From the IMG/VR virus record IMGVR_UViG_3300030202_003189, positions 1-64,000 of that record: a stretch of 64,000 bases of DNA; one strand, given 5' to 3'. Under the pieces are notes generated by a model, which worked only from the letters and a program-made list of their open reading frames with translations, was not told the origin of the DNA and searched no databases. This document shows, piece after piece, positions 14,128-53,960 of the stretch. The translations under genes were made by a program, and so were the position numbers. Position 1 is the first letter of the stretch, and the number at the start of each line of letters is the position of its first letter.

Positions 14128-14445
14128 ATGAAAAACTTAATAAGAATAATCAAAGAAGAACTCTCATTACTCCAAGAGAAAGAGAAGTGTTGTAGAAGAT
14201 ATGAATGGATGGGTGGTGAATGGAAATGTACTAAATATAGAAAATGTGCAGATGGTGAAAAACCTGTAGGACAATCACCTCAAGGTATACAAGAAGATAA
14301 AGAAAAAGAATGTTGTGTATGTTATGAAAAGAAACCTGTACTAGGTCATGTTCAAACAGGACCACACGATGGTGATGGATGGAAATGGAAGTGTTGTGGA
14401 TATAAACCATGTAGTGAACTAACTCAAGGTTTCACTCTAGGATAA
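14128..14445 (+). CDS. Small precursor with two Cys-rich peptide modules
   Basis: IIKEE/LLQE leader; CCRRYEW..WKC..Y.KC and CCVCY..WKWKCC.Y.PC separated by IQE. Confidence 0.85.
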   Translation: MKNLIRIIKEELSLLQEKEKCCRRYEWMGGEWKCTKYRKCADGEKPVGQSPQGIQEDKEKECCVCYEKKPVLGHVQTGPHDGDGWKWKCCGYKPCSELTQGFTLG

Positions 14446-25538: not shown

Positions 25539-26633
25539 CTAATAAATTTCCCCTTCACCAAACAAATCCTCTAGATATTCATTGTAACTATCTACAATTT
25601 CTTCATTCCCTTCATCTGGCCAATCCGGTTCTCCCGGAGTTAAATAACCTTTATGTGCTCTGATCAGGTCAAACGCTGTTGATTGTCCAGGGTCTTCCCC
25701 ATCTTTGGTTGCTTGCCACAATATGGTTGACATTAAATCGGTAACATCGTAAAAGGTTATTTTTGTGGAGTTCTCATTCTTAGGATCAACCTTACTTTCA
25801 CCGACAGGTTTACCAATCAAACCTTCTAAAGCATCACGATACATTTTTCGGTACTCATTCTCATAAACCCAATTATAACTATCACTGTATACCCACTCAA
25901 CTTCGTTTAGGATATCTGATAATTTATCCGAACTATCTAATAAAACAGTAAAATTATATTTCCTACTTTCCAAATCCTGAGAAGGGTCTAAAAACCTATT
26001 AAGTCTATCTGGAGTTAAGAAAAAACTTCTATCCCCTATTTTATCCGAGTCTACCCATGGATCAAACTCTTCTCTAAAAGTATCTATTTCTTCATTCATA
26101 TGATGTTTACCAACATACCTTACCAAACCAATAAAATTTTCTTCAGTCATCATGTCAACCAAATCCTCAGCATTTAGCTTTATAAAATTTAGTTCCATAG
26201 GCATTGCATCTGGGTCAAATACTATTTCCGCTATATCTTCAGAGTCACCAACAAAAAGCTCAGTTTGTTCATTTCCAACAATTCCTAAGATTATCCTATC
26301 ACCTTTCCTTGATAGTTCTATATTTTCCCACATAGGAAAAATCCAAGTCATAAATAAATCCATGTCTTCTTTTGAATATGTTGGTTTCCCTATTTGTAAA
26401 GCCTTGATTAAAAACATACCTCCGTGATAAACACGTTCTTGTAAATGTTCAAGAAATTCTAAACCTCTTCCTCTGTCATCAATGAAATGATAAAGTGATG
26501 CTATATCATAACCAAATAATTTAATTATTTCTTGGGCTTCACCATCTCTATACTCATCTTCGTAGAATAAGACATCAGTAATTTTATCAATAGACTTCCC
26601 CTCGTTTAATATTTTCTTAATTAGATACTTCAT
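25539..26633 (-). CDS. Acidic LxE-leader protein, probable paralog of a domain in the 42564 polyprotein
   Basis: MKYLIKKILNEG leader; TATTTATA upstream at 26638. Confidence 0.85.
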   Translation of the reverse strand: MKYLIKKILNEGKSIDKITDVLFYEDEYRDGEAQEIIKLFGYDIASLYHFIDDRGRGLEFLEHLQERVYHGGMFLIKALQIGKPTYSKEDMDLFMTWIFPMWENIELSRKGDRIILGIVGNEQTELFVGDSEDIAEIVFDPDAMPMELNFIKLNAEDLVDMMTEENFIGLVRYVGKHHMNEEIDTFREEFDPWVDSDKIGDRSFFLTPDRLNRFLDPSQDLESRKYNFTVLLDSSDKLSDILNEVEWVYSDSYNWVYENEYRKMYRDALEGLIGKPVGESKVDPKNENSTKITFYDVTDLMSTILWQATKDGEDPGQSTAFDLIRAHKGYLTPGEPDWPDEGNEEIVDSYNEYLEDLFGEGEIY

Positions 26634-28164: not shown

Positions 28165-28320
28165 ATGAAAAATAAAACTACAAAAATTGTTTCTATAGGG
28201 TGGAAAGAACACGACAGATTCGTCGCAATGGGTAAACTAATTCAACAAAAGAAAGCTAAAAAATTATATTATTCTTGTGATAAGTTTTATTACGAAGTAG
28301 AAAGAGGTAATAAAGTTTAA
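28165..28320 (+). CDS. Small hypothetical protein (51 aa, not in ORF track)
   Basis: TATCTTTG-TAGT-ATG host-type promoter at 28153-28160. Confidence 0.65.
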   Translation: MKNKTTKIVSIGWKEHDRFVAMGKLIQQKKAKKLYYSCDKFYYEVERGNKV

Positions 28321-33020: not shown

Positions 33021-36000
33021 ATGAAAAAATTATTTACATCACTTTTAATATTTTTAACCCTATCCACCAGCGCTCAAAACAGCTGGATTAACATCCAATT
33101 ATTAACAGATAATTACCCAACAGAAACGTCTTGGAACATCACCCCTCCAGGAGGTTATCCTATTATTATTCAAAATGATTCAGCAATGTTACCTAATACC
33201 TTGTATGATACTACTATTGCCATTCAAGGTACAATTGTCGCATCTATTTTTGACCAATATGGTGATGGGTTAAGTGCTTCACAGTGGGGAGGTACTGATG
33301 GTTGGTTTCTTATACAAAATGATTGTCAAGATACAATTATGTATGTAGCGGGTAATTTTGGTGATACTTTAGTTAATACACTACAAATTGCTCCATGCGC
33401 ACCTCCTTCTGGTGGTTGTTTAGATTCATTAGCGACCAATTATGATCCAACAGCTGCTTTTGATGATGGTTCATGTATCTACCCTCCCTGTGCTGGTTTA
33501 GATACATTTTATGTTATAAATTATTGTCAAGGGGCACAAAATAAAGTTCATTATAAATGGTCAAATATGGCTAACCCTAATTGTAGGATGGCCGCGTATA
33601 CGAGGTCCACAGACCCTTATTCTTTAGGGTCACAATGGTACCCTTACCCAGGAAATTTTTCAAATACAGGAATATTATTTAGTAATAGTCAAAACAACAC
33701 AACATATTATTTCTTAGGTATGTTAGCAGATTCTTCTTATACCGATACATTAGTAGTTACAACACAAGAATGTATTCCAGGTTGTACCGACCCAACGGCA
33801 CTAAATTACAATCCTTGGGCAAATTCAGATGATGGTACATGTCAAGCACCACCTGCAAATTGTATAACTGGAGAATCTAATATAGTAGTAACAGTAATGC
33901 CAGACACATACCCAGGGGAGACATCTTGGGAAATAGCAGATACAACCGGAACTGTATTAGCCACATCACCAGCTTACTCTACACCAGGTGTTCCTGTAAT
34001 TACAGAAGTATGTATACCAAACGGTACGGTTATTGAATTTACCTTGTTTGACTCATTCGGTGATGGTTTATGTGGTTCATGTTATGGAGGAGCTGATGGA
34101 GGAGCAGTAGTACAGACCCTTTGTGGTGATACTATATTAGCTATATTACCTGGGAATGCTAATTTTGGAAATGATACTTCTGTAGTATACACAGTGGCTC
34201 CTTGTACACCAAATGCTATATTAGGATGTACAACACCAGGATTTACAGAATATAATCCACAAGCAACAGTAGATGACTCATCTTGTGTAACACCAGTCAT
34301 ATTAGGATGTACTGATATAACTTCACCAGATTACGATTCATTAGCTAACACAATGTCAGTAATACCACAATGTCAATATACATTAGTAATTACGGATGAA
34401 GCCGAAGATGGATGGTTTGGGGCGTGGGTAGGTATATTACAAGACACAACAATATTAGGTCCATTTATGATGGGTCCTCAAGATGGTTATTCAGAAACAT
34501 TTACAATTAGTTTAAGTGCTTTAAGTCCAGTAGAGTTAATGTTCTTTGCACCAGGTAATTCAGCTACCACAGCAAATCAATGTGGTTTCTTTTTAATAGG
34601 TCCTGAAGGGGACACTACCCTATCAGGAGGGACTAATCCTTGGACTGACCCAATGTTACAATTTCCTTATAGATATAATGGGGTACCTTACTGTGGTGAC
34701 TTTTGTACAGATGGTGTTCTTGGTTGTATGGACCCAACAGCCTTAAATTATAATCCATTGGCAAATATGCCTGACAATTGTACACCAGTTGTATTAGGTT
34801 GTACAAATAATTTAGCTTTTAATTATAACCCTTTAGCAAATACAGATGATAGTTCCTGTGTATCAATTATAATTGGATGTATGGACACCACAGCATTCAA
34901 CTTTAACCCAACAGCTAATACAAACGACCCATCTTCATGTATATCAGTAATATTAGGTTGTATGGATGATACAATGTTTAACTACAACGCTGCGGCTAAC
35001 ACCGACGATGGTAGTTGTATACCAGTAGTGTTTGGTTGTACAGATCCATTAGCATTTAACTATGATAGTTTATCTAACACAAATAATGGTACATGTACAC
35101 CAGTCATATTAGGGTGTACGGATGCAACTGCTTTTAATTACAACCCTAACGCAAATACTAATGATTTATCTTGTGTGGCTGTTGTTATTGGTTGTACCGA
35201 TGCGTCGGCTCTTAATTATGATTCATTGGCGAACACAAATAACGGATGTATATACCCAATTTTAGGTTGTACCGACCCTACCGCATTTAATTATAACCCC
35301 AACGCAAATACTAGTGATAGTACGTGTATACCAGTTATTATCGGTTGTACTGACGCAACCGCGTTAAATTATGACTCAACAGCAAATACAAACAACGGTT
35401 GTGTTTATCCTATCTTAGGATGTACCGATGCCACTGCGTTTAATTATAATCCTAACGCAAATGTTAATGATTCTACCTGTGTCCCATTTATATATGGGTG
35501 TACAGATAACACGATGTTTAACTATGACCCAACCGCGAACACAGACAATGGTTCTTGTATAGCGTTTGTTTACGGATGTACGGATAGTACAATGTTTAAC
35601 TATGACCCATTAGCAAATACTAACAATAACACATGTGTACCATTCATCTATGGTTGTACCGACTCCATAGCTTTTAACTATAACCCAGCGGCTAATACGG
35701 ATAATAATACGTGTATTCCAGTATTATCAGGTTGTACCGACTCAATAGCGTTAAATTACAATCCATTGGCTAATACAGACAATGGTAGTTGTATTATACC
35801 ATTATACGGGTGTACAGACTCGACAGCCTTAAATTATAATTCACTCGCAAATACTGATGATGGATCATGTATTTTACCAATTTACGGATGTACGGATAGT
35901 ACAATGTTTAACTATAATCCATTGGCAAATACAAATGATGGTAGTTGTATATCCTTTATTTACGGTTGTACCGACCCAACAATGTTTAACTACGACCCTA

Positions 36001-36809
36001 GTGCAAACTCTGACGATGGGACCTGTATCCAATTTATATATGGATGTACTGATAACACAATGTTTAACTATGACCCAACAGCAAATACCGATAATGGTTC
36101 ATGTGAGCCTTTTATTTATGGATGTACTGATAGTACAATGTTTAATTATGACCCAACAGCAAATACAGATAACGGATCTTGTATATCATTTATTTATGGA
36201 TGTACCGATAATGCGGCACTTAACTTTAATCCTTTAGCGAACACATTAGATAATACGTGTTGTTACATAGGAGGATGTACTGATTCATTGGCAGTAAACT
36301 ATAACCCTAATGCTTGTAATGATGACGGTTCATGTATAACACCAATAGTTGGTTGTACGGATGTTGCGGCTTACAATTATAATCCATTAGCAAATGTATC
36401 AGATTCTGCATCTTGTTTGTATAATGCAGGATGTTATGGAGGACCTGGAATTCCTTATTGGTTAAATGATGGGTGTTACGCTTGGGTAATAAGTGTAGAT
36501 GACTATTGTTGTACTACCGATTGGGATGCGTCATGTATATCAATGTATGATTATTGTCAACAAGGGTGGCCTACTTCAATTGAGGACATATCGGCTCTAG
36601 GGATTGTAGTATACCCTAATCCAACAACAGATATAATAACAATAGAAACAAGGTTAGATATAGAAGTTGAGGTTTACGACATTATGGGTAAACTACTAGT
36701 AAATAAAGATTCTAAACGAGTTGATTTATCAGATTATCCAAATGGGGTCTATAATCTAATAATTAAACATAACGATAAACGATATACAACAAGAGTGATT
36801 AAACAATGA
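33021..36809 (+). CDS. T9SS (type A CTD) substrate with about 26 GCTD repeats
   Basis: Signal peptide ending TSA-Q; three D.YP.ETSW-type domains; C-terminal VYPNP..YDIMGKLL..DLSDYPNGVY..RVIKQ sorting domain. Confidence 0.92.
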   Translation: MKKLFTSLLIFLTLSTSAQNSWINIQLLTDNYPTETSWNITPPGGYPIIIQNDSAMLPNTLYDTTIAIQGTIVASIFDQYGDGLSASQWGGTDGWFLIQNDCQDTIMYVAGNFGDTLVNTLQIAPCAPPSGGCLDSLATNYDPTAAFDDGSCIYPPCAGLDTFYVINYCQGAQNKVHYKWSNMANPNCRMAAYTRSTDPYSLGSQWYPYPGNFSNTGILFSNSQNNTTYYFLGMLADSSYTDTLVVTTQECIPGCTDPTALNYNPWANSDDGTCQAPPANCITGESNIVVTVMPDTYPGETSWEIADTTGTVLATSPAYSTPGVPVITEVCIPNGTVIEFTLFDSFGDGLCGSCYGGADGGAVVQTLCGDTILAILPGNANFGNDTSVVYTVAPCTPNAILGCTTPGFTEYNPQATVDDSSCVTPVILGCTDITSPDYDSLANTMSVIPQCQYTLVITDEAEDGWFGAWVGILQDTTILGPFMMGPQDGYSETFTISLSALSPVELMFFAPGNSATTANQCGFFLIGPEGDTTLSGGTNPWTDPMLQFPYRYNGVPYCGDFCTDGVLGCMDPTALNYNPLANMPDNCTPVVLGCTNNLAFNYNPLANTDDSSCVSIIIGCMDTTAFNFNPTANTNDPSSCISVILGCMDDTMFNYNAAANTDDGSCIPVVFGCTDPLAFNYDSLSNTNNGTCTPVILGCTDATAFNYNPNANTNDLSCVAVVIGCTDASALNYDSLANTNNGCIYPILGCTDPTAFNYNPNANTSDSTCIPVIIGCTDATALNYDSTANTNNGCVYPILGCTDATAFNYNPNANVNDSTCVPFIYGCTDNTMFNYDPTANTDNGSCIAFVYGCTDSTMFNYDPLANTNNNTCVPFIYGCTDSIAFNYNPAANTDNNTCIPVLSGCTDSIALNYNPLANTDNGSCIIPLYGCTDSTALNYNSLANTDDGSCILPIYGCTDSTMFNYNPLANTNDGSCISFIYGCTDPTMFNYDPSANSDDGTCIQFIYGCTDNTMFNYDPTANTDNGSCEPFIYGCTDSTMFNYDPTANTDNGSCISFIYGCTDNAALNFNPLANTLDNTCCYIGGCTDSLAVNYNPNACNDDGSCITPIVGCTDVAAYNYNPLANVSDSASCLYNAGCYGGPGIPYWLNDGCYAWVISVDDYCCTTDWDASCISMYDYCQQGWPTSIEDISALGIVVYPNPTTDIITIETRLDIEVEVYDIMGKLLVNKDSKRVDLSDYPNGVYNLIIKHNDKRYTTRVIKQ
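33415..36416 (+). repeat. GCTD coding repeat array
   Basis: About 26 units counted; dense tandem array from about 34720 to 36416. Confidence 0.9.
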
Positions 36810-42511: not shown

Positions 42512-42536
42512 AAACCCCATTACTTGGGGTTTTTTT
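42512..42536 (+). terminator. Intrinsic terminator
   Basis: AAACCCCA-TTACT-TGGGGTTTTTTT. Confidence 0.85.
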
Positions 42537-42551
42537 ATTACTTTTTTTGAG

Positions 42552-42559
42552 TATTTATA
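42552..42559 (+). promoter_or_regulatory. Putative phage late promoter TATTTATA
   Basis: TATTTATA-GTAT-ATG. Confidence 0.6.
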
Positions 42560-42563
42560 GTAT

Positions 42564-45500
42564 ATGAGAAATCACAATAAAGAAAATGTCAGTGTTGGGT
42601 CGTACACGTTCCCTATAGAAGACCTCGATAAAAGGATATTAATCGAAGCTTTTAAGTTATATGATAGTAGTGTGGATGATCCAGAACGCATAGCGTCAGT
42701 AATACATGAATCATGGTGGAAAGAACTTGACAATATGTTAAGACTCTATGGTAAAAAAGGAATGGGTTTTTACTATGGTTATATGATGTATCTAAACCAA
42801 AACAAAAGTGGTGAGGAATTAAAAAATGGAGATATTAATCCAGTTGTTGCCCCAGGATATAAAGTACAAGAACAAGAAGGTGCTGGAACACACAGAGTTG
42901 GAGAACTTGATGGTGTGCAAATGATAGAGATTGAGGGTGTGTTTGGGTTGGCGTCCTATGGAGGTGACAGATGGAAGGGATCAGCAGATGGTAAAACTAA
43001 AATGGAATGGTCAATAATCTTTGACGATATGGGAGAAATGAAAGTCGGTCCTACATTTATTTATGATTATAAACAATATGAGTTGGAACCGGATGAGATT
43101 GATTACTGGAGTATAGGTGGAAGTAATACAGAAAATCTTTTAGCGGTTTTATTAAGTTTTTATAGAACATATGGCGATACTAATCTTATTACAGAAGAAA
43201 TTGATACGGAAATAAAATATGCTATTGATCAACAATACCGTAATGACCCAGAAGAAAGAAAAAACGTATTAGATTCTTTAGAGTTTGACCCTTATAAGGA
43301 TAGAGATTTTTATGTGGGTGGTTATAAAGAATTACAATTTGATGTTGAGCCTAGAACGTTAGTTAATAAATTAGCACAAGAAAAAGGTTACGGAAAAGTA
43401 GTAGATGAAATGCTAGGTGGGAACGGCACAGCTTATTTCACGTCAAAAGGAAATGTTATTAAAATAACTGGAGATAAAAGCGAATATGAAACCGCTAATG
43501 TAATTAAAGGAAAACAAAACAAATATATTGCCGATGTTTTCGAAAGTGGAAAATTAGATTCTTCTCATATTATTAGTGGTGACGCTTATATTATTATTAT
43601 GGAAGAATTAGGATTACCTAAAAGAATATCAGAAATATTTGAAGATTGTTGTTGTGGGGTTAATAAACCAATCTATATTGAATACAACGAAACTCCGGCA
43701 GTTATTCACCCTCCAGTTAATGGAAAAGAAGAATGTGAAAAATTACACAAAAATCTATTAATGATTAGACAAGAATTAACACAACATGGTATTAGTTGGA
43801 GTGATATTGGTATAGATAATTTAGGGATGAAAAATGGAAAGTTGGCTCTTCTTGATTTGGGAGAAACAACGGGTGGTATAGATACTGGGCAAACAATTGA
43901 ATTAAATGAACAAGAACAACTAGAATTAGAATTACCAACACCAATTGGAGAATTTGAATTTCCTGCAGGGTATGAAGATGTACACACCGAGACAGGTGAA
44001 GAGTATGCTGGCGCGGAACAAGAAACCGTAGATGCAATTAGAGATGAAGTAAGAGATGAATCTGTAACATATCTTTTTAAGAAGTGGGATAAAACAGGTG
44101 TAAATTTTGATGACCTAAAATTAATAGGTATTCCAACAAACAATTCTTTAATTAAAATCATGTTAGCGAAGAGATACCTTAAAAATACAATGAGACCTAT
44201 TCCAGTGTCCTATACTTTCGATTGTGAAGACCTTTCAAAAATGTTTATAAAAGACGCTAGAGATTATAGTGTAGATTATATTGAGCAATTTTTATGTGGA
44301 GAACACGAATGGGACGACTACGATAATTGGTATGATCATGATTGGTATGATGGAATGTCTGACGATTTAGATGATAGAAATTGGAAAACTATAATGAATA
44401 TTCTGGGTGTAACAACTCAAGAAGAAGCAGAAAATCTAGTCAATAATAGACCTCAAACGGAGGAAGAAGAAAGAATTGCCGAGGAAAAAGAAGAGGTAAT
44501 TAGTGAAATTAGAAGCAGTATATTGTGGACACATAATGACGAGGCAGAATGGAGAACCAAACGTGACATGGGTGATGACGTTATTGATAAATTGGGAGAA
44601 CATTTTAATAACGATGGAAAATTAAGCCGAGATGACAATGGAAAGTGGTCTTGGACAATTGAGGATAACTTATTAAATTGGTTGGGGGACGATATGTGGG
44701 ATAATATCGACCTATATGAATATCATCCAGATTATGCAGGTTATACTTTAGAAGATTGGTTAACGGATTGGTCTGTAGGACCTATACAAGATGCGATATT
44801 TGAATCACTTATGTTAGAAGAATTTACCTTTGAAGACTATGATTATGGTAAAAGAGGAGACCTACTAGAACCAAACACAAGATTCTTTGATAATTATTAT
44901 CATCCTAATTACGATATCAATGACGGACTCTATGATAGATTGGGTGAAATTGAACATTATTCATCGGCGAGCGCAACACCATTACTTAAAGAAGGATTAT
45001 TCGAACAATCCGACGCATTTGATAAGGGAGAACTTATAATATTAAAACACGTCCATAAAAATTTTAGCAAGAAAGAACTTGAAGATTTAGTATCGGAAAC
45101 ACCAATATATGGTGGTGCATCAAAAAAATGGACTACTCTCATGAAAATGTTTGGTATACCAACATCCTCAATGGAACAAGCCGCCATCTCAACTCAATAT
45201 GCCAAATACGCTTTAGATAATTGGAATGAGGAGGGTAATTATACCATGGAAAACCCAATAAGAGATATGATAAGTTGGTGGGATATTAGTCGTGACGAAA
45301 CAGGGTCACAGGTTGAATATAAATCAGGTGGTACAGATGTACTTGCCTTTGACGACGACGACGCTGAGGAGAGGGGAGATAATGAATTTCATGACTGGGA
45401 TGGGGATATGGAGACCGTTGATTGGGGAGATTATGAGGCTTATGATTCTGAAGTAAGAGAAACAGAACCAACAGGGAAATATCCAGAGATCCCTAAAATA

Positions 45501-46421
45501 TCGGAAGGGGTTGCTGGTGACCAAGAAAAACACACAGGTGAACAAGGAGGGTTTTTTACTCTAGATGGAAGTGATAACATAGGTAATACCGATTTATATA
45601 AAGGTGATGGTTTTGACATTATTCACCAACATAGAGGTAATGTGCACCTGTCCGACATCTCACCGGAAGAGAGTGAAACATCAATACCAAAAGGAAGTAA
45701 AAAAATTAAAAAGACCGTACTTAAACCAAGACTTGATAAAGGACCATTTAACATACCAGTACCTATGAAAGAACATTATGAGGATGTAGAAAGTAATCCG
45801 GATCTTAATCCAGAGGTAGAGGAAGGAGATGTTATTGAGCTTTTATATATGGATGATCCATATTCCATCCCTATAAAAACAAAAGGAGTCGTTATGGGAT
45901 TTGAAGGTAAACCTGGGGATTTTGCTTATAAAATTCTAGTGAATTGGATTTTGGGACCAGAAAAGTTAACTCCTATGGCTCTTCTACCGGATGCCGATAT
46001 ATACAGATTCCCAAAAAAGAAAAAGGAGGGGATAAATGAGCAGTGGAAAAAACCCTACAAAGACCCAAAGGCCGTTGTAAATGGAAAAGAGATTGACTTA
46101 GACGTAGCAGATACAGAGTTTCTAAAACAAAAAGGAATGATGTATAAAACTTCTTATCCAAGAAATAGAGGTATGTTATTTATTTGGGATGACATAGTTC
46201 CAATATCTATGTGGATGAAAAATACTTACCTTCCTTTGGATATTGTTTATATGGTAGATGGTGAAGTGGTTGATTATGATAAAGACGTACAACCTTGTGA
46301 TAAACAACAATGTGAGACATACGGAGACGTTAATGCCAATCAGGTAATAGAACTTCTCAGTGGAGGAGTAGATAATTATAATATATCAATTGGAGACCAA
46401 ATTGAGTTAATGGATGTATAA
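42564..46421 (+). CDS. 1285-aa polyprotein: protein-kinase-like domain, acidic domains, DUF4314-like and DUF192 domains
   Basis: GGNGTAY/VIK/SDIGIDN/LLDLG kinase motifs; GDVIELLYMDDP..KGVV (DUF4314-like); DVADT..KGMM..GMLF..MWMKNTYLPLDIV..VIEL (DUF192); LxE linkers. Confidence 0.85.
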   Translation: MRNHNKENVSVGSYTFPIEDLDKRILIEAFKLYDSSVDDPERIASVIHESWWKELDNMLRLYGKKGMGFYYGYMMYLNQNKSGEELKNGDINPVVAPGYKVQEQEGAGTHRVGELDGVQMIEIEGVFGLASYGGDRWKGSADGKTKMEWSIIFDDMGEMKVGPTFIYDYKQYELEPDEIDYWSIGGSNTENLLAVLLSFYRTYGDTNLITEEIDTEIKYAIDQQYRNDPEERKNVLDSLEFDPYKDRDFYVGGYKELQFDVEPRTLVNKLAQEKGYGKVVDEMLGGNGTAYFTSKGNVIKITGDKSEYETANVIKGKQNKYIADVFESGKLDSSHIISGDAYIIIMEELGLPKRISEIFEDCCCGVNKPIYIEYNETPAVIHPPVNGKEECEKLHKNLLMIRQELTQHGISWSDIGIDNLGMKNGKLALLDLGETTGGIDTGQTIELNEQEQLELELPTPIGEFEFPAGYEDVHTETGEEYAGAEQETVDAIRDEVRDESVTYLFKKWDKTGVNFDDLKLIGIPTNNSLIKIMLAKRYLKNTMRPIPVSYTFDCEDLSKMFIKDARDYSVDYIEQFLCGEHEWDDYDNWYDHDWYDGMSDDLDDRNWKTIMNILGVTTQEEAENLVNNRPQTEEEERIAEEKEEVISEIRSSILWTHNDEAEWRTKRDMGDDVIDKLGEHFNNDGKLSRDDNGKWSWTIEDNLLNWLGDDMWDNIDLYEYHPDYAGYTLEDWLTDWSVGPIQDAIFESLMLEEFTFEDYDYGKRGDLLEPNTRFFDNYYHPNYDINDGLYDRLGEIEHYSSASATPLLKEGLFEQSDAFDKGELIILKHVHKNFSKKELEDLVSETPIYGGASKKWTTLMKMFGIPTSSMEQAAISTQYAKYALDNWNEEGNYTMENPIRDMISWWDISRDETGSQVEYKSGGTDVLAFDDDDAEERGDNEFHDWDGDMETVDWGDYEAYDSEVRETEPTGKYPEIPKISEGVAGDQEKHTGEQGGFFTLDGSDNIGNTDLYKGDGFDIIHQHRGNVHLSDISPEESETSIPKGSKKIKKTVLKPRLDKGPFNIPVPMKEHYEDVESNPDLNPEVEEGDVIELLYMDDPYSIPIKTKGVVMGFEGKPGDFAYKILVNWILGPEKLTPMALLPDADIYRFPKKKKEGINEQWKKPYKDPKAVVNGKEIDLDVADTEFLKQKGMMYKTSYPRNRGMLFIWDDIVPISMWMKNTYLPLDIVYMVDGEVVDYDKDVQPCDKQQCETYGDVNANQVIELLSGGVDNYNISIGDQIELMDV

Positions 46422-47473: not shown

Positions 47474-48547
47474 ATGAGTAAAATTAAACTAGAGTATATT
47501 TGGTTGGATGGTTATAACCCAGAACAAAACATAAGAAGTAAGACTAAAATACTTGACGTAAAAGAATTAGATGGTGGAATTCTAGCACAAAATCTACCGG
47601 TGTGGTCTTTTGATGGTAGTTCTACAAAACAAGCGGCAGGAGATAATTCAGATTGTCTACTCCAACCGGTACACCTTATTAAAGACCCAACCAGAAACGA
47701 AGGTTATATCGTTTTATGTGAGGTATTAAATGCCGATTGGACTCCACATAAGAGTAATACACGACATAAATTAAGAGAATTAGAGAGGGTGGCTAAAAAA
47801 CACAAGTTTTGGTTTGCTTTTGAACAGGAGTATGTATTAACTAATATACAGGGGAGGCCGTTAGGGTTTCCAACTATAGGATACCCAAAACCACAGGGAG
47901 AATTTTATTGTGGTCTTGGTTCAGAAAATGTAGAAGGAAGAGATGTGGTAGAAGAACACTTAGACTTATGTTTAGAGGCTGGTCTAGATATTACCGGAAT
48001 AAACGCAGAAGTAATGATTGGACAATGGGAATACCAACTCATGGGCAAAGATTCTCCTCTTAAGTCAGCTGACGACCTAATACTATCAAGATATCTTCTA
48101 ATAAAATGTATGGAAAGATTCCAAGTAACGGTAGATTGGAAACCTAAACCAATTGAGGGCGATTGGAATGGTTCCGGGATGCATGTTAATTTTTCAACCA
48201 AGGAAACTAGAGAAAAGGGTGGAAAAGAGATGTTTGATGATATTTGTGAGAGTCTAGGTTTATACCATAAAGAACACATAGAGGTTTATGGAAACGATAA
48301 TGATAAGAGATTAACTGGACTACATGAGACTCAATCCATAGAAAAGTTTAGTCACGGAGTAAGTGATAGAGGTGCAAGTATTAGAATACCAATATCGACA
48401 GTTAAAAATAACTGGAAGGGTTATCTAGAAGATAGAAGACCAGCAAGTAATGGAGACCCGTACCTAATCATTGAAAAGTTAGTTTCGACTGTTTCAACAT
48501 CCTTAACTAGTAAAGAAAAACAGAAATCTTTAGTCTTGAAAAAATAA
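47474..48547 (+). CDS. glnA: Glutamine synthetase type II
   Basis: LEYIWLDG, WSFDGSST, INAEVMIGQWEYQ, DWNGSGMHVNFS, RLTGLHET, DRGASIRIP, YLEDRRPASNGDPY. Confidence 0.97.
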   Translation: MSKIKLEYIWLDGYNPEQNIRSKTKILDVKELDGGILAQNLPVWSFDGSSTKQAAGDNSDCLLQPVHLIKDPTRNEGYIVLCEVLNADWTPHKSNTRHKLRELERVAKKHKFWFAFEQEYVLTNIQGRPLGFPTIGYPKPQGEFYCGLGSENVEGRDVVEEHLDLCLEAGLDITGINAEVMIGQWEYQLMGKDSPLKSADDLILSRYLLIKCMERFQVTVDWKPKPIEGDWNGSGMHVNFSTKETREKGGKEMFDDICESLGLYHKEHIEVYGNDNDKRLTGLHETQSIEKFSHGVSDRGASIRIPISTVKNNWKGYLEDRRPASNGDPYLIIEKLVSTVSTSLTSKEKQKSLVLKK

Positions 48548-51506: not shown

Positions 51507-53960
51507 TTAACTCACCTTAACTTTTATTTTATTTGTTTTTTTATCGTAACTTAATGATAGTGTTGATCCCTTTTTAACAGAAGATCTTAACATTTCTTCG
51601 GCTATGGCATCTTCTAGATAATTAGAAATTGCTCTATTCATTGGTCTAGCACCATACTTATCACTATATCCCTTTTTCATTACAAGATCTTTTGCGCTTT
51701 TATTGACCTTAATAGTGTAACCCATTTCTAACATTCTCTCTTTAAGGAACCCTAAATGTACTTCTAGTATCTTAGAAATATTATCTTTTGAGAGTTTATT
51801 GAAAACTACAATATCGTCTAACCTATTAATAAATTCAGGATTGAATCTCTTCTTCAAATTCTTGTCAATTATTGATTGTACTCTTTCTTCATAGTAGTCA
51901 TCACTATTTGAAGTTCTAAATCCTACACCTTCTCCAAAATCGTCTACTTCTCTCATACCGATATTTGAGGTTAAAACAACTAAACAATTTCTAAAATTAA
52001 CTTTTCTTCCCATCCCATCTGTCATAAACCCATCATCTAAAAGTTGTAATAAAGAGTGAAATATATCCGGATGTGCTTTTTCCACCTCATCAAAAAGTAC
52101 CAAAGAATACGGTTTACGTCTAACTTTTTCGGTTAATTGTCCCCCTTCATTGTATCCAACATAACCCGGAGGTGAACCTATCATTTTTGTTGCTGCAAAC
52201 TTCTCAGCGTATTCCGACATATCTACCCTAATTAAAGAATCCTCACTACCAAAAACTTCAAGAGCTAGTTGATTTGCTAATTCTGTTTTTCCAACACCTG
52301 TTGGACCCAAAAACATAAAACTACCTATTGGTTTATTAGGATTTTTAATACCGACTCTATTTCTTCTTAAAGATTTACAAACCTTATCAATTGCCAAATC
52401 TTGTCCGATAATCGAAGATTTTAGTACTTTATCTATATCTAATAGTTTTTGGGACTCATCCTCACTAAGTTTAGTGACTGGGATATTAGTACTTGTAGAT
52501 ATAACCTTTAATATTTGTTCTTCGTCGACAATTGATCGGTCGTTCTGTAATTGGGTTTCCCAATGATCCACAAAGTTTTTTAAGTCAGTTTTTAGAGTTT
52601 TTTCTTTATCCCTAAGACTGGCAGCTTTTTCATATTGTTGTGAAATAACCACTTTATTTTTCTCTTCTTTTATCTGATCAATCTGCTTCTCAACCTCCTC
52701 GATTCTTTTAGGTGGTTGAGCATGAACAGCAACACTCGCCCCAGCTTCATCCAAAACATCTATCGCTTTATCTGGAAAATTTCTATCAGTAATGTATCTT
52801 TCAGATAACTCAACACACTTAATTATTGCTTCTTTAGTGTAAGATACTTTATGGTAATCTTCGTAGGTTTCTTTTATATTATTTAATATGGTAAGAGTTT
52901 CTTTTTTTGTTGGAGGATCAATCATAACTTTCTGAAATCTTCTTTCTAAAGCACCATCCTTCTCAATGTGTTCTCTATATTCATCAAGAGTTGTTGCTCC
53001 AATACACTGTATTTGACCTCTAGAAAGGGCCGGTTTTAAGATATTGGCGGCGTCCATTGATCCGGAAGAATTCCCTGCCCCTACCATAGTGTGTAACTCG
53101 TCAATGAACATAATTATATCTTTATCGCCTCTTACTTCATCTAATAATCCTTTTATTCGTTCCTCAAACTGACCTCGATATTTAGTACCCGCCACTAAAG
53201 AAGTTAAATCTAAAGAAACTACTCTTTTACCCATTAAGGGGCGAGGACACTTTTTCGTTATAATCTTAGTGGCCAATCCGTCAACAATTGAAGATTTCCC
53301 AACTCCTGGGTCCCCAATAAGAACAGGATTATTTTTCTTTCTTCTACTTAATATTTGTGCAATTCTATCTACTTCTTTTTCTCGCCCAATGACAGTGTCT
53401 AGTTTTCCATTTCTTGCTTCTTCTGTAACATCTAGACTAAAAGCATCTAAAATTGGTGTTCCACTCTTTTCTGTTGGGGTTTTTCCTGAGGGAGCTCCCT
53501 CCTCTTGACCAAACGGTTCTTCATTATACATCATACTCATACTTATTAATTCTTTTTTATAGGTTTTATATTCGACTCCAAATTTAAGCAAAAAACGCGA
53601 GACTCCCGAGCTTTTTTGTGCTAAAATTGATAACATTAAATGATGGGAGTTTATTTTGTTATCTTTTAACAGTTTTCTTTCATCATTAACATGATCTAGA
53701 ATTGATTGGGCGTCAGTGGTAAAAGGAATGACCATACGCAATTCCCGGTTCTCTGTGTCAATTGTTAATAACTCCTCTAATAAGGTAGTTATAGAGTCTA
53801 AATCTAACCCCAAATTCAATAATAGCTCACATGAGCTATTCCTCTCATGTTTTAGTATTCCCATGAATAAATGAATAGGTCTAATATATTCTGACTTATA
53901 AACGGTTGCAACGTCTAGACCAGTTCTTATGATTTCTTTCAATGGATATAATTCTTTCAT
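51507..53960 (-). CDS. clpC: ATP-dependent Clp protease ATP-binding subunit (ClpC-type)
   Basis: Clp_N repeats, [11 protein letters not shown] coiled coil, [20 protein letters not shown] (ClpP-docking-like) loop. Confidence 0.95.

What the first reader, a model, noticed from the sequence alone, without database searches (positions are those of the whole stretch)
42564..46421. 1285-aa polyprotein stringing a protein kinase, DUF4314 and DUF192 domains between LxE linkers
Recognisable unrelated domains are separated by LITEE, ELNEQ, LLKEG/LFEQ, ISEG, MKEH and INEQ. They include a kinase fold (Gly loop, VIK, SDIGIDN, DLG), a DUF4314-like SH3 domain and DUF192. Two of the unknown segments seem to have free-standing paralogs in this window: LFKxWDKxG..LKxxGI in 28317, and the acidic domain of 25539. 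This looks like a viral polyprotein whose units can be encoded either fused or alone. It could deliver a kinase at injection, before phage transcription starts. T7 protein kinase is the established precedent for phage kinases disabling host functions.
Basis: partly seen in the sequence, partly recalled or inferred. Interest (0 to 1): 0.72.

Follow-up and report, generated by a model that had tools for sequence, protein, structure and literature searches.

The report
Phage cargo polyprotein with protease-site linkers
A marine T4-like giant phage encodes a 1285-residue string of seven independent protein modules, including a stripped-down protein kinase, joined by short floppy linkers that each carry the cutting motif of the phage's own head-maturation protease, so it is probably cut into separate pieces inside the capsid and injected with the DNA.

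Summary
The ORF at 42564..46421 (+) is real, and it is intact in four independent marine metagenomes. DUF192 is a clear match. The kinase segment folds as a protein-kinase-like domain (pLDDT 91.7) and keeps the Gly-loop, Lys, D-x4-N and DLG residues. The 'DUF4314-like' segment belongs to that family at a weak score. Every module also occurs alone or in other large proteins. Co-occurring seawater strains differ by a whole module at joint 3.

The genome encodes a T4 gp21-type prohead protease, whose T4 counterpart cuts after L/I-x-E. It also has a gp23-type capsid protein with such sites in its N-terminal 60 residues. The gene shares a promoter-like box with the terminase, portal and protease genes.

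The most likely reading is a late-made cargo polyprotein that the prohead protease cuts in trans. Cleavage, packaging and kinase activity are inferred, not shown. The claimed paralogues are weak: one shares a 32-residue motif and the other shares nothing. This is a new variant of the known 'polyvalent protein' theme. Interest is moderately high.

The parts
42512..42532 (+). Terminator-like hairpin ending the upstream unit
   Evidence: an 8-bp G+C stem followed by a T run. Variant contigs in seawater runs break at 42533.
42552..42559 (+). TATTTATA promoter-like box, 4 nt before the ATG
   Evidence: the 8-mer is 17-fold enriched upstream of ORFs in this genome. The same box and spacing precede TerL. 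It is also found before the portal, prohead protease and sheath-like genes, but not before DNA polB or RNR.
42564..46421 (+). Whole polyprotein ORF, 1285 aa, 147.5 kDa, pI 4.4, net charge -131
   Evidence: No indels in four independent marine metagenome runs.
42564..43196 (+). Module N (aa 1-211), function unknown. It has a possible short leader ending ILIE28 and ends in ITE211.
   Evidence: Free-standing homologues of about 200 aa exist (P0070, P0141, P0149). No Pfam match.
43197..43910 (+). Minimal protein-kinase-like module (aa 212-449), ending in IELNE449
   Evidence: Invariant residues are G285, K300, D414, N419 and D431. The model has pLDDT 91.7 and its best fold matches are protein kinases, Rio2 and APH.
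43911..45005 (+). Module M3 (aa 450-814), very acidic (net -58, pI 4.2) and W/Y/D-rich, no recognisable fold. It ends in LKE810/LFE814.
   Evidence: 55 homologous domains were found.
45006..45506 (+). Module M4 (aa 815-981), a helical bundle plus beta-sheet of unknown function, the most widespread module. It ends in ISE981.
   Evidence: (98 domains in 91 proteins). A paralogue lies in the 1375-aa ORF at contig 216631-220758.
45507..45773 (+). Module M5 (aa 982-1070), Gly/His-rich, the most conserved module. It ends in MKE1070.
   Evidence: 69-91% identity in proteins whose other shared modules are 34-49% identical. It is often placed at the N-terminus of other polyproteins.
45774..46040 (+). 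Module M6 (aa 1071-1159), a divergent DUF4314 (SH3-like) domain, ending in INE1159
46041..46418 (+). DUF192 module (aa 1160-1285)
   Evidence: The nearest solved structures, 3PJY and 3M7A, are both uncharacterised.
44985..45005 (+). Joint 3 (LKEGLFE), a linker that is also a strain-level recombination breakpoint
   Evidence: pLDDT is below 50 at aa 801-816. Variant contigs in runs X3 and X4 leave the window sequence at 44984 (..PL|DEETDIFGQG) and rejoin at 45017 (..INEEYESERK|). Homologues P0005, P0008 and others carry an extra module here.

Best explanation
This is a late-expressed, modular cargo polyprotein of a marine T4-like jumbo phage whose host is probably a member of the Bacteroidota.

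Seven independently folding modules are strung together: N, a minimal protein-kinase-like enzyme, acidic M3, M4, M5, a DUF4314 SH3-like domain, and DUF192. The linkers are short and probably disordered, and each ends in [L/I/M]-x-Glu.

The proposed mechanism has four steps.
1. The protein is made together with the head proteins.
2. It is taken into the prohead core.
3. The phage's gp21-type serine prohead protease (contig 67683-68372) cuts after the linker Glu residues. This would release pieces of about 24 (21 if a 28-residue leader is also removed), 27, 43, 19, 10, 10 and 15 kDa.
4. The pieces leave the capsid with the DNA and act in the newly infected cell before any phage gene is expressed. 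The kinase would phosphorylate host targets.

Because the protease acts in trans on a three-residue motif, modules can be added, lost or reordered by recombination at the linkers without disturbing processing. The same modules can also be encoded alone behind a short N-terminal leader that ends in the same motif.

Shown here: the module boundaries, the motif at every boundary, the variable architecture, the kinase fold with intact catalytic residues, the presence of the protease, and the shared promoter-like box. Inferred: cleavage, packaging, ejection, kinase activity and its targets.
For: Module boundaries and motif
- Boundaries derived from homologue breakpoints coincide with all six [LIM]xE linkers.
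- Across 41 homologues, 190 of 292 junction clusters have such a site within 6 residues, against 21% expected.
- Inserted modules bring their own ..IELNE|..QLDE|..TINE|..KISE| or ..KMNE| ends.
- In very distant relatives (20-30% identity) with 2-6 tandem kinase modules, each module still ends in ..PP[VMIL][LI]E| or ..L-x-E|.
- 75 of 89 distinct kinase tails carry the motif, against 44 +/- 5 in control windows.

Linker exposure
- In the AlphaFold model of aa 440-990, three of the four stretches with pLDDT below 50 are joints 2, 3 and 4 (aa 440-460, 801-816, 980-990); the fourth is a 4-residue dip at 957-960.

Protease and canonical substrates
- The genome has Peptidase_S77 (E 5e-26). It aligns to T4 gp21 structure 5JBL (E 1e-15) and carries a His in ELNHP and a Ser in GISSRG, taken to be the catalytic pair by comparison with the family.
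- T4 gp21 cuts after L/I-X-E, and a 10-residue N-terminal capsid targeting sequence loads cargo into the head (PMC9026906).
- The gp23-type capsid protein has three of its five sites in its first 60 residues. The scaffold-like neighbour has 23 sites in 469 aa.

Leaders on stand-alone and long relatives
- Stand-alone module genes and 47 of 81 long relatives begin with short leaders ending in the motif, for example MRKPSNILKE|, MKNKKDNMLQE| and MNTTLTE|.
- N-terminal enrichment across this genome is 43%, against 26 +/- 3% in shuffles.

Co-occurrence and expression
- 3 of 3 related IMG/VR contigs with the kinase module also encode S77.
- The same TATTTATA box and spacing precede this gene and TerL.

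Effector context
- No embedded peptidase was found in this protein or in five large relatives.
- Distant kinase-module relatives sit in proteins with ART-PolyVal, Acb1/2H, GNAT and NUDIX domains. That is a counter-defence or effector context.
Against: - There is no proteomic, transcriptomic or biochemical evidence. No RNA run was found.
- [LIM]xE is a short motif in a Glu-rich protein: 26 sites in all, 19 of them inside modules. The motif alone therefore proves little.
- The N-terminus of this particular protein lacks the strong leader seen in its neighbours. How it would be targeted to the prohead is unknown.
- The protein is very acidic, unlike the basic T4 internal proteins.
- The specificity of this phage's protease is assumed from T4 and was not measured.
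- The complex prediction of protease with linker gave no answer.
- The kinase module is not recognised by any Pfam kinase model. Activity on proteins rather than small molecules is not established.
Confidence: 0.55

Rival explanations
1. It is an uncleaved multidomain 'polyvalent' protein. It works as one 147-kDa chain, whether packaged or not. The hydrophobic-x-Glu ends would then be a structural feature of module termini, or a by-product of recombination between short similar linker sequences.
For: N4 virion RNA polymerase is a precedent for a large multidomain protein packaged unprocessed (PMC5512222). There are many [LIM]xE sites inside modules. The linkers are Glu-rich anyway. The duplicated TIELNE flanks of inserted modules look like recombination joints.
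Against: The motif is retained at module ends in relatives of 20-30% identity, where the rest of the linker has changed completely. Stand-alone genes carry it at the end of a short N-terminal leader, where no joint is needed. The motif matches the specificity of the protease family this phage encodes.
Confidence: 0.2
2. It is cleaved in the prohead but serves assembly rather than host take-over. It would be a core, inner-body or space-filling protein whose acidic pieces are expelled or help DNA packaging and ejection. On this reading the enzyme-like modules are incidental or inactive.
For: It is extremely acidic (net -131). In T4, core proteins are cut into many pieces by gp21 (PMC9026906). 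M3, M4, M5 and N have no recognisable enzymatic fold.
Against: The catalytic residues of the kinase module are invariant across 42 diverse sequences. Module content is highly variable between close strains, which is typical of conflict genes and not of assembly machinery. Relatives combine with ART, Acb1-like 2H, GNAT and NUDIX domains.
Confidence: 0.12
3. It is a cytoplasmic polyprotein that is never packaged. It would be cut by another phage or host protease, or not cut at all, and would act during the infection in which it is made.
For: There is no direct evidence of virion association. No strong capsid-targeting leader is present on this copy.
Against: It shares the promoter-like box with the terminase, portal and protease genes. 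It sits in a block of genes with cleavable-looking N-terminal leaders. It co-occurs with S77 in 3 of 3 related contigs. There is no obvious advantage in fusing late-made cytoplasmic enzymes.
Confidence: 0.1
4. It is an assembly or gene-calling artefact that fuses several genes.
For: None found.
Against: More than 15 independent contigs carry long orthologous ORFs. No indels were seen in four independent runs, and at least 20 marine runs hold the sequence.
Confidence: 0.01

Closest known systems
Polyvalent proteins of phages and conjugative elements (Iyer, Burroughs, Anand, de Souza, Aravind 2017, PMC5512222)
   Same: Many unrelated effector-type domains sit in one polypeptide of a phage. Domain shuffling is extensive, and stand-alone versions of the same domains exist. 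The family includes a minimal Ser/Thr/Tyr-type kinase lacking the C-terminal subdomain, noted specifically in Bacteroidetes phages. The authors proposed delivery with the DNA and cited T7 kinase as precedent. Distant relatives of the kinase module here co-occur with ART-PolyVal, 2H/Acb1, GNAT and NUDIX domains.
   Different: None of the signature Pfam families of that paper is detected in this protein, and Kinase-PolyVal does not hit it or 41 relatives. That paper proposes release of domains by an embedded peptidase (MPTase). Here there is no embedded peptidase, and the linkers instead carry the site of the head-maturation protease acting in trans.
T4 internal proteins IPI-III and Alt: capsid targeting sequence plus gp21 cleavage after L/I-X-E (PMC9026906)
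   Same: The phage lineage is T4-like, with gp23-type capsid, gp21-type protease and T4-type terminase. The three-residue motif is the same. Short N-terminal leaders ending in the motif are found on stand-alone relatives. Alt is a precedent for an injected host-modifying enzyme.
   Different: In T4 each cargo protein is a separate gene, and the protease removes a short terminal propeptide. Here up to seven or more functional modules are concatenated with internal sites. T4 internal proteins are basic, whereas this protein is strongly acidic.
Ejection and inner-body proteins of phiKZ, 201phi2-1 and SPN3US, cut by diverged gp21 homologues at S/A-X-E (PMC10052503, PMC9026906)
   Same: These are giant phages with many packaged proteins that are cut after Glu at a minimal motif, sometimes at several sites per protein.
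   Different: In those phages the multiple cuts degrade long propeptides. Only one mature fragment per protein is described, not a series of distinct folded domains. The P3 preference is also different: small residues there, hydrophobic residues here.
Phage T7 gp0.7 protein kinase
   Same: It is a phage protein kinase that acts on host proteins early in infection, so it is a functional analogy.
   Different: T7 gp0.7 is synthesised after entry and is not packaged. No sequence similarity was detected: tblastn of the whole protein against 50,697 phage records found only DUF192 hits.
Polyproteins of eukaryotic RNA viruses
   Same: Unrelated functional units are translated as one chain and separated by a viral protease at short linker motifs.
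   Different: This is a dsDNA phage. The protease is encoded separately and is the capsid-maturation enzyme. The purpose would be co-packaging rather than expression from a single mRNA.

Membership tests
Protein-kinase-like superfamily | Gly-rich loop, ATP-anchoring Lys in strand 3, helix-C Glu, catalytic Asp-x4-Asn, and metal-binding Asp of DFG | tested here: met
   G285/G288, K300, E307 (over 90% conserved), D414-x4-N419 and D431-L-G433 are invariant or nearly so in 42 sequences. A profile of the alignment hits only protein kinases in the PDB over the catalytic-loop to DFG region.
Protein-kinase-like superfamily | Bilobal kinase fold | tested here: met
   The AlphaFold model has pLDDT 91.7 and pTM 0.88. 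Foldseek top hits are PknG, Rio2, CK1, CDC7 and APH(2'') with probability 0.98-1.0. TM is about 0.4 because the C-lobe is truncated and there is a 50-residue N-terminal helical extension.
Pfam Kinase-PolyVal (PF18762) | Match to the family HMM | tested here: not met
   No match in the whole genome at E <= 10. None of 42 module homologues matches at E <= 0.1.
Pfam Kinase-PolyVal (PF18762) | Loss of the C-terminal kinase subdomain with catalytic residues kept, and occurrence in Bacteroidetes phage polyvalent proteins and as stand-alone genes | tested here: met
   The module ends 18 residues after DLG (aa 431 to 449). Stand-alone complete genes exist. The description is in PMC5512222.
Polyvalent proteins (Iyer et al. 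2017) | Several unrelated effector-type domains in one phage polypeptide, with variable architecture | tested here: met
   There are seven modules. Architectures of 980-2249 aa show insertions and permutations.
Polyvalent proteins (Iyer et al. 2017) | Signature domains of that set (MuF, ArdC-N, MPTase, LPD families, ART-PolyVal and others) | tested here: not met
   Pfam finds only DUF192 and weak DUF4314 in this protein. ART-PolyVal, Acb1/2H, GNAT and NUDIX are found only in distant relatives of the kinase module.
Polyvalent proteins (Iyer et al. 2017) | Delivered into the recipient cell with the DNA | not testable with these tools
   This needs virion proteomics or infection experiments.
Substrates of a T4 gp21-type prohead protease | The phage encodes an S77 protease with catalytic His and Ser | tested here: met
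   PF03420 matches at E 5e-26. The alignment to 5JBL shows a His in ELNHP and a Ser in GISSRG; their catalytic role is assigned from knowledge of the family, not from the tool output.
Substrates of a T4 gp21-type prohead protease | L/I-X-E sites at exposed positions | tested here: met
   The motif is present at all six joints. The three joints that were modelled lie in stretches with pLDDT below 50.
Substrates of a T4 gp21-type prohead protease | N-terminal capsid targeting sequence | tested here: inconclusive
   This copy has only ..DLDKRILIE28, conserved in orthologues. Clear short leaders occur on stand-alone modules and many relatives and on neighbouring genes.
Substrates of a T4 gp21-type prohead protease | Actual cleavage after Glu during head maturation | not testable with these tools
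   The complex prediction gave no answer. No proteomic data were available.
DUF192 (PF02643) | Match above the gathering score | tested here: met
   85-91 bits against a cut-off of 27. PDB relatives are 3PJY at E 2e-12 and 3M7A.
DUF4314 (PF14192) | Match above the gathering score | tested here: inconclusive
   P0001 scores 18.1 bits, below 27. 19 of 21 homologues of the module match at E <= 0.01, best 1e-7.

The most novel reading that the evidence does not exclude
In a widespread group of marine T4-like jumbo phages, the capsid-maturation protease doubles as a polyprotein-processing enzyme. Capsid cargo would be encoded as freely shuffled cassettes, which the protease separates after L/I/M-x-Glu. 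These cassettes include arrays of up to six minimal kinases, ART, 2H/Acb1-like, GNAT and NUDIX modules, and several unknown folds. That would be a trans-cleaved effector polyprotein system in a dsDNA phage, functionally parallel to RNA-virus polyproteins and to polymorphic toxin cassettes.
Probability: 0.5. Interest if true: 0.8.

Novelty: new variant of a known kind. Interest (0 to 1): 0.66.

Why it matters
If the linkers are cut by the prohead protease, this gives a simple rule for reading phage 'dark matter'. The rule is a short leader or linker ending in hydrophobic-x-Glu, in a phage that encodes an S77 protease. It would predict which unknown proteins are packaged and injected.

It would also explain how giant phages can diversify their first-strike arsenal by cassette exchange without re-evolving packaging signals. 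The family further supplies a compact (about 190-residue core) kinase scaffold and several widespread modules with no known fold (M3, M4, M5, N). It is abundant in seawater: at least 20 metagenome runs from at least 10 studies. The idea is directly testable with recombinant protease plus substrate, and by re-searching marine viral metaproteomes.

Tried and rejected
- PHROGs on the protein and ten neighbours gave nothing useful.
- tblastn against 50,697 phage records found only DUF192 hits in cyanophages, so there is no cultured relative.
- ESM Atlas feature search for M3 and M4 gave no usable hit.
- Foldseek of the M3+M4 model against PDB and AlphaFold DB clusters gave no match with E < 0.1.
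- A profile of the DUF4314-like module against PDB sequences gave no hit.
- A first mixed-fragment alignment (A2) was discarded because MAFFT scattered the fragments.
A single-sequence query was used instead.
- Records behind loci from the look-up of encoding contigs could not be searched for the protease.
- Complex prediction of the protease with the joint-2 peptide gave 'no answer'. It is not evidence either way.
- The RNA-run search found no clear RNA library.
- Pfam on the 1375-aa paralogue and seven neighbours gave nothing significant.
- The literature on DUF192 contains no functional study.
- An assembly artefact was rejected.


Full report
**What is there**

The window is the first 64 kb of a 231-kb IMG/VR virus contig, estimated 70% complete. 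The ORF at 42564..46421 (+) is exactly as described: ATG start, 1285 codons, no stops. It follows a terminator-like hairpin at 42512-42532. A TATTTATA box lies 4 nt before the ATG. The stop codon overlaps the start of the next gene.

The sequence is present in at least 20 marine or seawater metagenome runs from at least 10 studies. Contigs from four of these runs laid on the gene show substitutions but no frameshifting indels. They also show one in-frame 102-nt skip. The ORF is therefore not an artefact.

**What kind of phage**

- The large terminase is T4-type. Its nearest relatives in cultured phages are Flavobacterium and Microcystis myoviruses at about 31-33% identity.
- The contig encodes a gp23-type major capsid protein at 72360-74297.
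- It also encodes a gp21-type prohead protease, Peptidase_S77, at 67683-68372 (E 5e-26). This protein aligns to the T4 gp21 crystal structure 5JBL at E 1e-15 and carries a His in ELNHP and a Ser in GISSRG, which I take to be the catalytic residues.
- A neighbouring 1262-aa protein carries a type IX secretion sorting domain. This hints at a Bacteroidota host.

**Domains**

- DUF192 is unambiguous (aa 1177-1281, E 3e-24).
- The segment at aa 1071-1159 scores below threshold for DUF4314 (18.1 bits). However, 19 of 21 homologues of the segment match that family, best E 1e-7.
- The proposed kinase (aa 212-449) is missed by every Pfam model, including Kinase-PolyVal.
- A 42-sequence alignment of the kinase segment has invariant G285, K300, D414, N419 and D431. 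G288, E307 and G433 are nearly invariant.
- A profile of that alignment hits only protein kinases among PDB sequences, across the catalytic loop and DFG region.
- The AlphaFold model is confident (pLDDT 91.7). Its best structural matches are PknG, Rio2, CK1, CDC7 and aminoglycoside phosphotransferases, at probability about 1.
- The module ends 18 residues after DLG, so it lacks the usual C-lobe helices.
- The remaining modules have no Pfam match: N (1-211), M3 (450-814), M4 (815-981) and M5 (982-1070).
- A model of M3+M4 (pLDDT 74) has no fold match in the PDB or AlphaFold DB clusters.
- The whole protein is strongly acidic (net -131). M3 alone has net charge -58.

**The linkers are real module boundaries**

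- A word-indexed search found 41 relatives of 709-2249 aa. An exhaustive search found 208 at E <= 0.001.
- BLAST breakpoints of the query against the 41 relatives cluster at aa 209, 441-453, 806-822, 964-984, 1063-1082 and 1148-1160.
- Close orthologues carry extra modules inserted exactly there.
- More distant proteins hold the same modules in another order, for example M4 before the kinase, or M5 first.
- Inserted modules bring their own ..IELNE..QLDE..TINE..KISE or ..KMNE ends.
- Over all relatives, 190 of 292 junction clusters have the motif within 6 residues, against 21% by chance. These are not independent events, but more than ten different junction types are involved.
- In the structure model of aa 440-990, three of the four stretches with pLDDT below 50 are joints 2, 3 and 4; the fourth is a 4-residue dip at 957-960.
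- In two seawater runs, variant contigs leave the window sequence at nt 44984, continuing ..PL|DEETDIFGQG. They rejoin at nt 45017, preceded by ..INEEYESERK. Co-occurring strains therefore differ by a whole module at joint 3.

**Fused or alone**

Each module also occurs by itself or in unrelated large proteins. One stand-alone kinase gene (273 aa) is complete and internal to its contig.

Stand-alone versions, and 47 of 81 long relatives, begin with a short leader ending in the same motif. Examples are MRKPSNILKE|, MKNKKDNMLQE|, MNTTLTE| and MYTLKE|.

Distant relatives of the kinase module are striking. Single proteins hold two to six tandem kinase modules, and each module ends in ..PP[VMIL][LI]E or L-x-E. 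75 of 89 distinct kinase tails carry the motif, against 44 +/- 5 in control windows. Those proteins also contain ART-PolyVal, Acb1-like 2H phosphoesterase, GNAT, NUDIX and nucleotidyltransferase domains.

**Link to the prohead protease**

- T4 gp21 cuts after L/I-X-E. T4 internal proteins are loaded through a 10-residue N-terminal capsid targeting sequence that gp21 removes (PMC9026906).
- In this phage the canonical substrates look T4-like. The capsid protein has three of its five [LIM]xE sites in its first 60 residues. The scaffold-like protein at 70925-72334 has 23 sites in 469 aa.
- 43% of the contig's ORFs have the motif in residues 5-27, against 26 +/- 3% in shuffles.
- Most ORFs between 14 and 42 kb of the window start with a leader such as M.R.IKL.ESDLT.IV..IL.E.
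- All three related IMG/VR contigs that carry the kinase module also encode S77.
- The TATTTATA box is 17-fold enriched upstream of ORFs. It precedes the terminase (same spacing as here), portal, protease and sheath-like genes, and most leader-bearing genes. It does not precede DNA polymerase B or ribonucleotide reductase. This suggests, but does not prove, late co-expression.

**Interpretation**

The best-supported reading is a cargo polyprotein processed in trans by the prohead protease inside the capsid and ejected with the DNA (confidence about 0.55 for the whole chain).

The steps not shown are cleavage, packaging, ejection, kinase activity and its targets. The main rival is an uncleaved polyvalent protein (about 0.2). 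Lesser rivals are an assembly role for the acidic pieces and a purely cytoplasmic role.

**Relation to what is known**

Iyer et al. 2017 (PMC5512222) defined polyvalent proteins. They described a minimal kinase without the C-terminal subdomain in Bacteroidetes phages, with stand-alone copies, and cited T7 kinase as precedent. They proposed release of domains by embedded peptidases.

This protein works like a member of that class but fails the sequence tests for its signature families. It has no embedded peptidase. Its linkers carry the site of the head-maturation protease.

In T4, phiKZ and SPN3US the prohead protease removes or degrades propeptides of single-function proteins. I found no description of a series of folded effector modules separated by such sites.

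I therefore rate it a new variant of a known kind.

The ORF at 28317 shares only a 32-column motif with the start of M3. The ORF at 25539 shares nothing significant. Both do begin with leaders ending in the motif (MKKRILELLME|, MKYLIKKILNE|), so they may belong to the same cargo set without being paralogues. The only true paralogue, of M4, lies in a 1375-aa ORF at contig 216631-220758. That ORF has the same box and a leader, MKEIIEIENIIKLLTE|.

Noticed in passing
window 14128-42487 (ORFs starting at 14128, 17089, 17503, 21328, 21962, 22356, 24407, 25539(-), 27225, 28317(-), 29291, 30284, 31366, 32298, 40714, 41157) and contig 146041, 146781, 206615, 225871: Most genes of this block begin with a conserved amphipathic leader of about 12-23 residues ending in hydrophobic-x-Glu. 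The strongest form is M.R.IKL.ESDLT.IV..IL.E|. It looks like a capsid-targeting propeptide shared by dozens of otherwise unrelated proteins of unknown function.
   Followed up: partly
window 42552-42559 and 54 upstream matches of TATTTAT[AT] before about 50 ORFs across the contig (e.g. before 60430, 62267, 67683): The box [AG]TATTTAT[AT] is 17-fold enriched upstream of ORFs. It lies either 3-5 nt or 14-18 nt before the start codon. With the short spacing the mRNAs would be nearly leaderless. It precedes structural genes but not DNA polB or RNR, so it is a candidate late promoter.
   Followed up: partly
proteins P0129, P0140, P0147, P0172, P0177, P0178, P0179 (metagenomic relatives); locus L007 10001-14320: Single proteins carry two to six tandem copies of the minimal kinase module. 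Some also carry ART-PolyVal, Acb1-like 2H, GNAT, NUDIX or poly(A)-polymerase-type domains. P0129 sits on a phage-like contig next to DNA polymerase A and RecA-like genes.
   Followed up: partly
window 45507-45773 (module M5): M5 is far more conserved than its neighbours: 69-91% identity in proteins whose other shared modules are 34-49% identical. In one group of relatives with a PAP2 domain it is the very first module. It could be the part that binds a conserved capsid component.
   Followed up: no
window 42533 and 42567; 44984 and 45017: Variant contigs in seawater runs break away from the window sequence just upstream of the promoter box and again 4 nt into the ORF (continuing MREFKRNNKK..). 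They also break at joint 3. The promoter and start codon therefore seem to be shared by different genes in different strains.
   Followed up: partly
window 43262-43365: One low-depth contig of run X1 skips 102 nt in frame (34 codons) in the N-terminal helical extension of the kinase module.
   Followed up: no
window 33021-36809: A 1262-aa phage protein ends in a type IX secretion C-terminal sorting domain (Por_Secre_tail, E 8e-12). This is unusual for a phage and hints at a Bacteroidota host.
   Followed up: no
window 47474-48547 and 51507-53960 (-): The phage encodes a glutamine-synthetase-like protein and a full ClpB-type double AAA+ chaperone.
   Followed up: no
contig 216631-220758 (locus L017) and locus L012 2797-12143: Further polyprotein-like giant ORFs exist. 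One is a 1375-aa paralogue sharing M4, with a leader and the promoter box. In a related 232-kb contig, a 1319-aa ORF ending in the kinase module is followed directly by a 1787-aa ORF.
   Followed up: partly
contig 70925-72334 and 72360-74297: The scaffold-like protein has 23 [LIM]xE sites in 469 aa, about 3.5 times the genome average. The gp23-type capsid protein has sites at E23, E51 and E60 and then none until residue 399. This predicts a T4-like propeptide of about 60 residues.
   Followed up: partly
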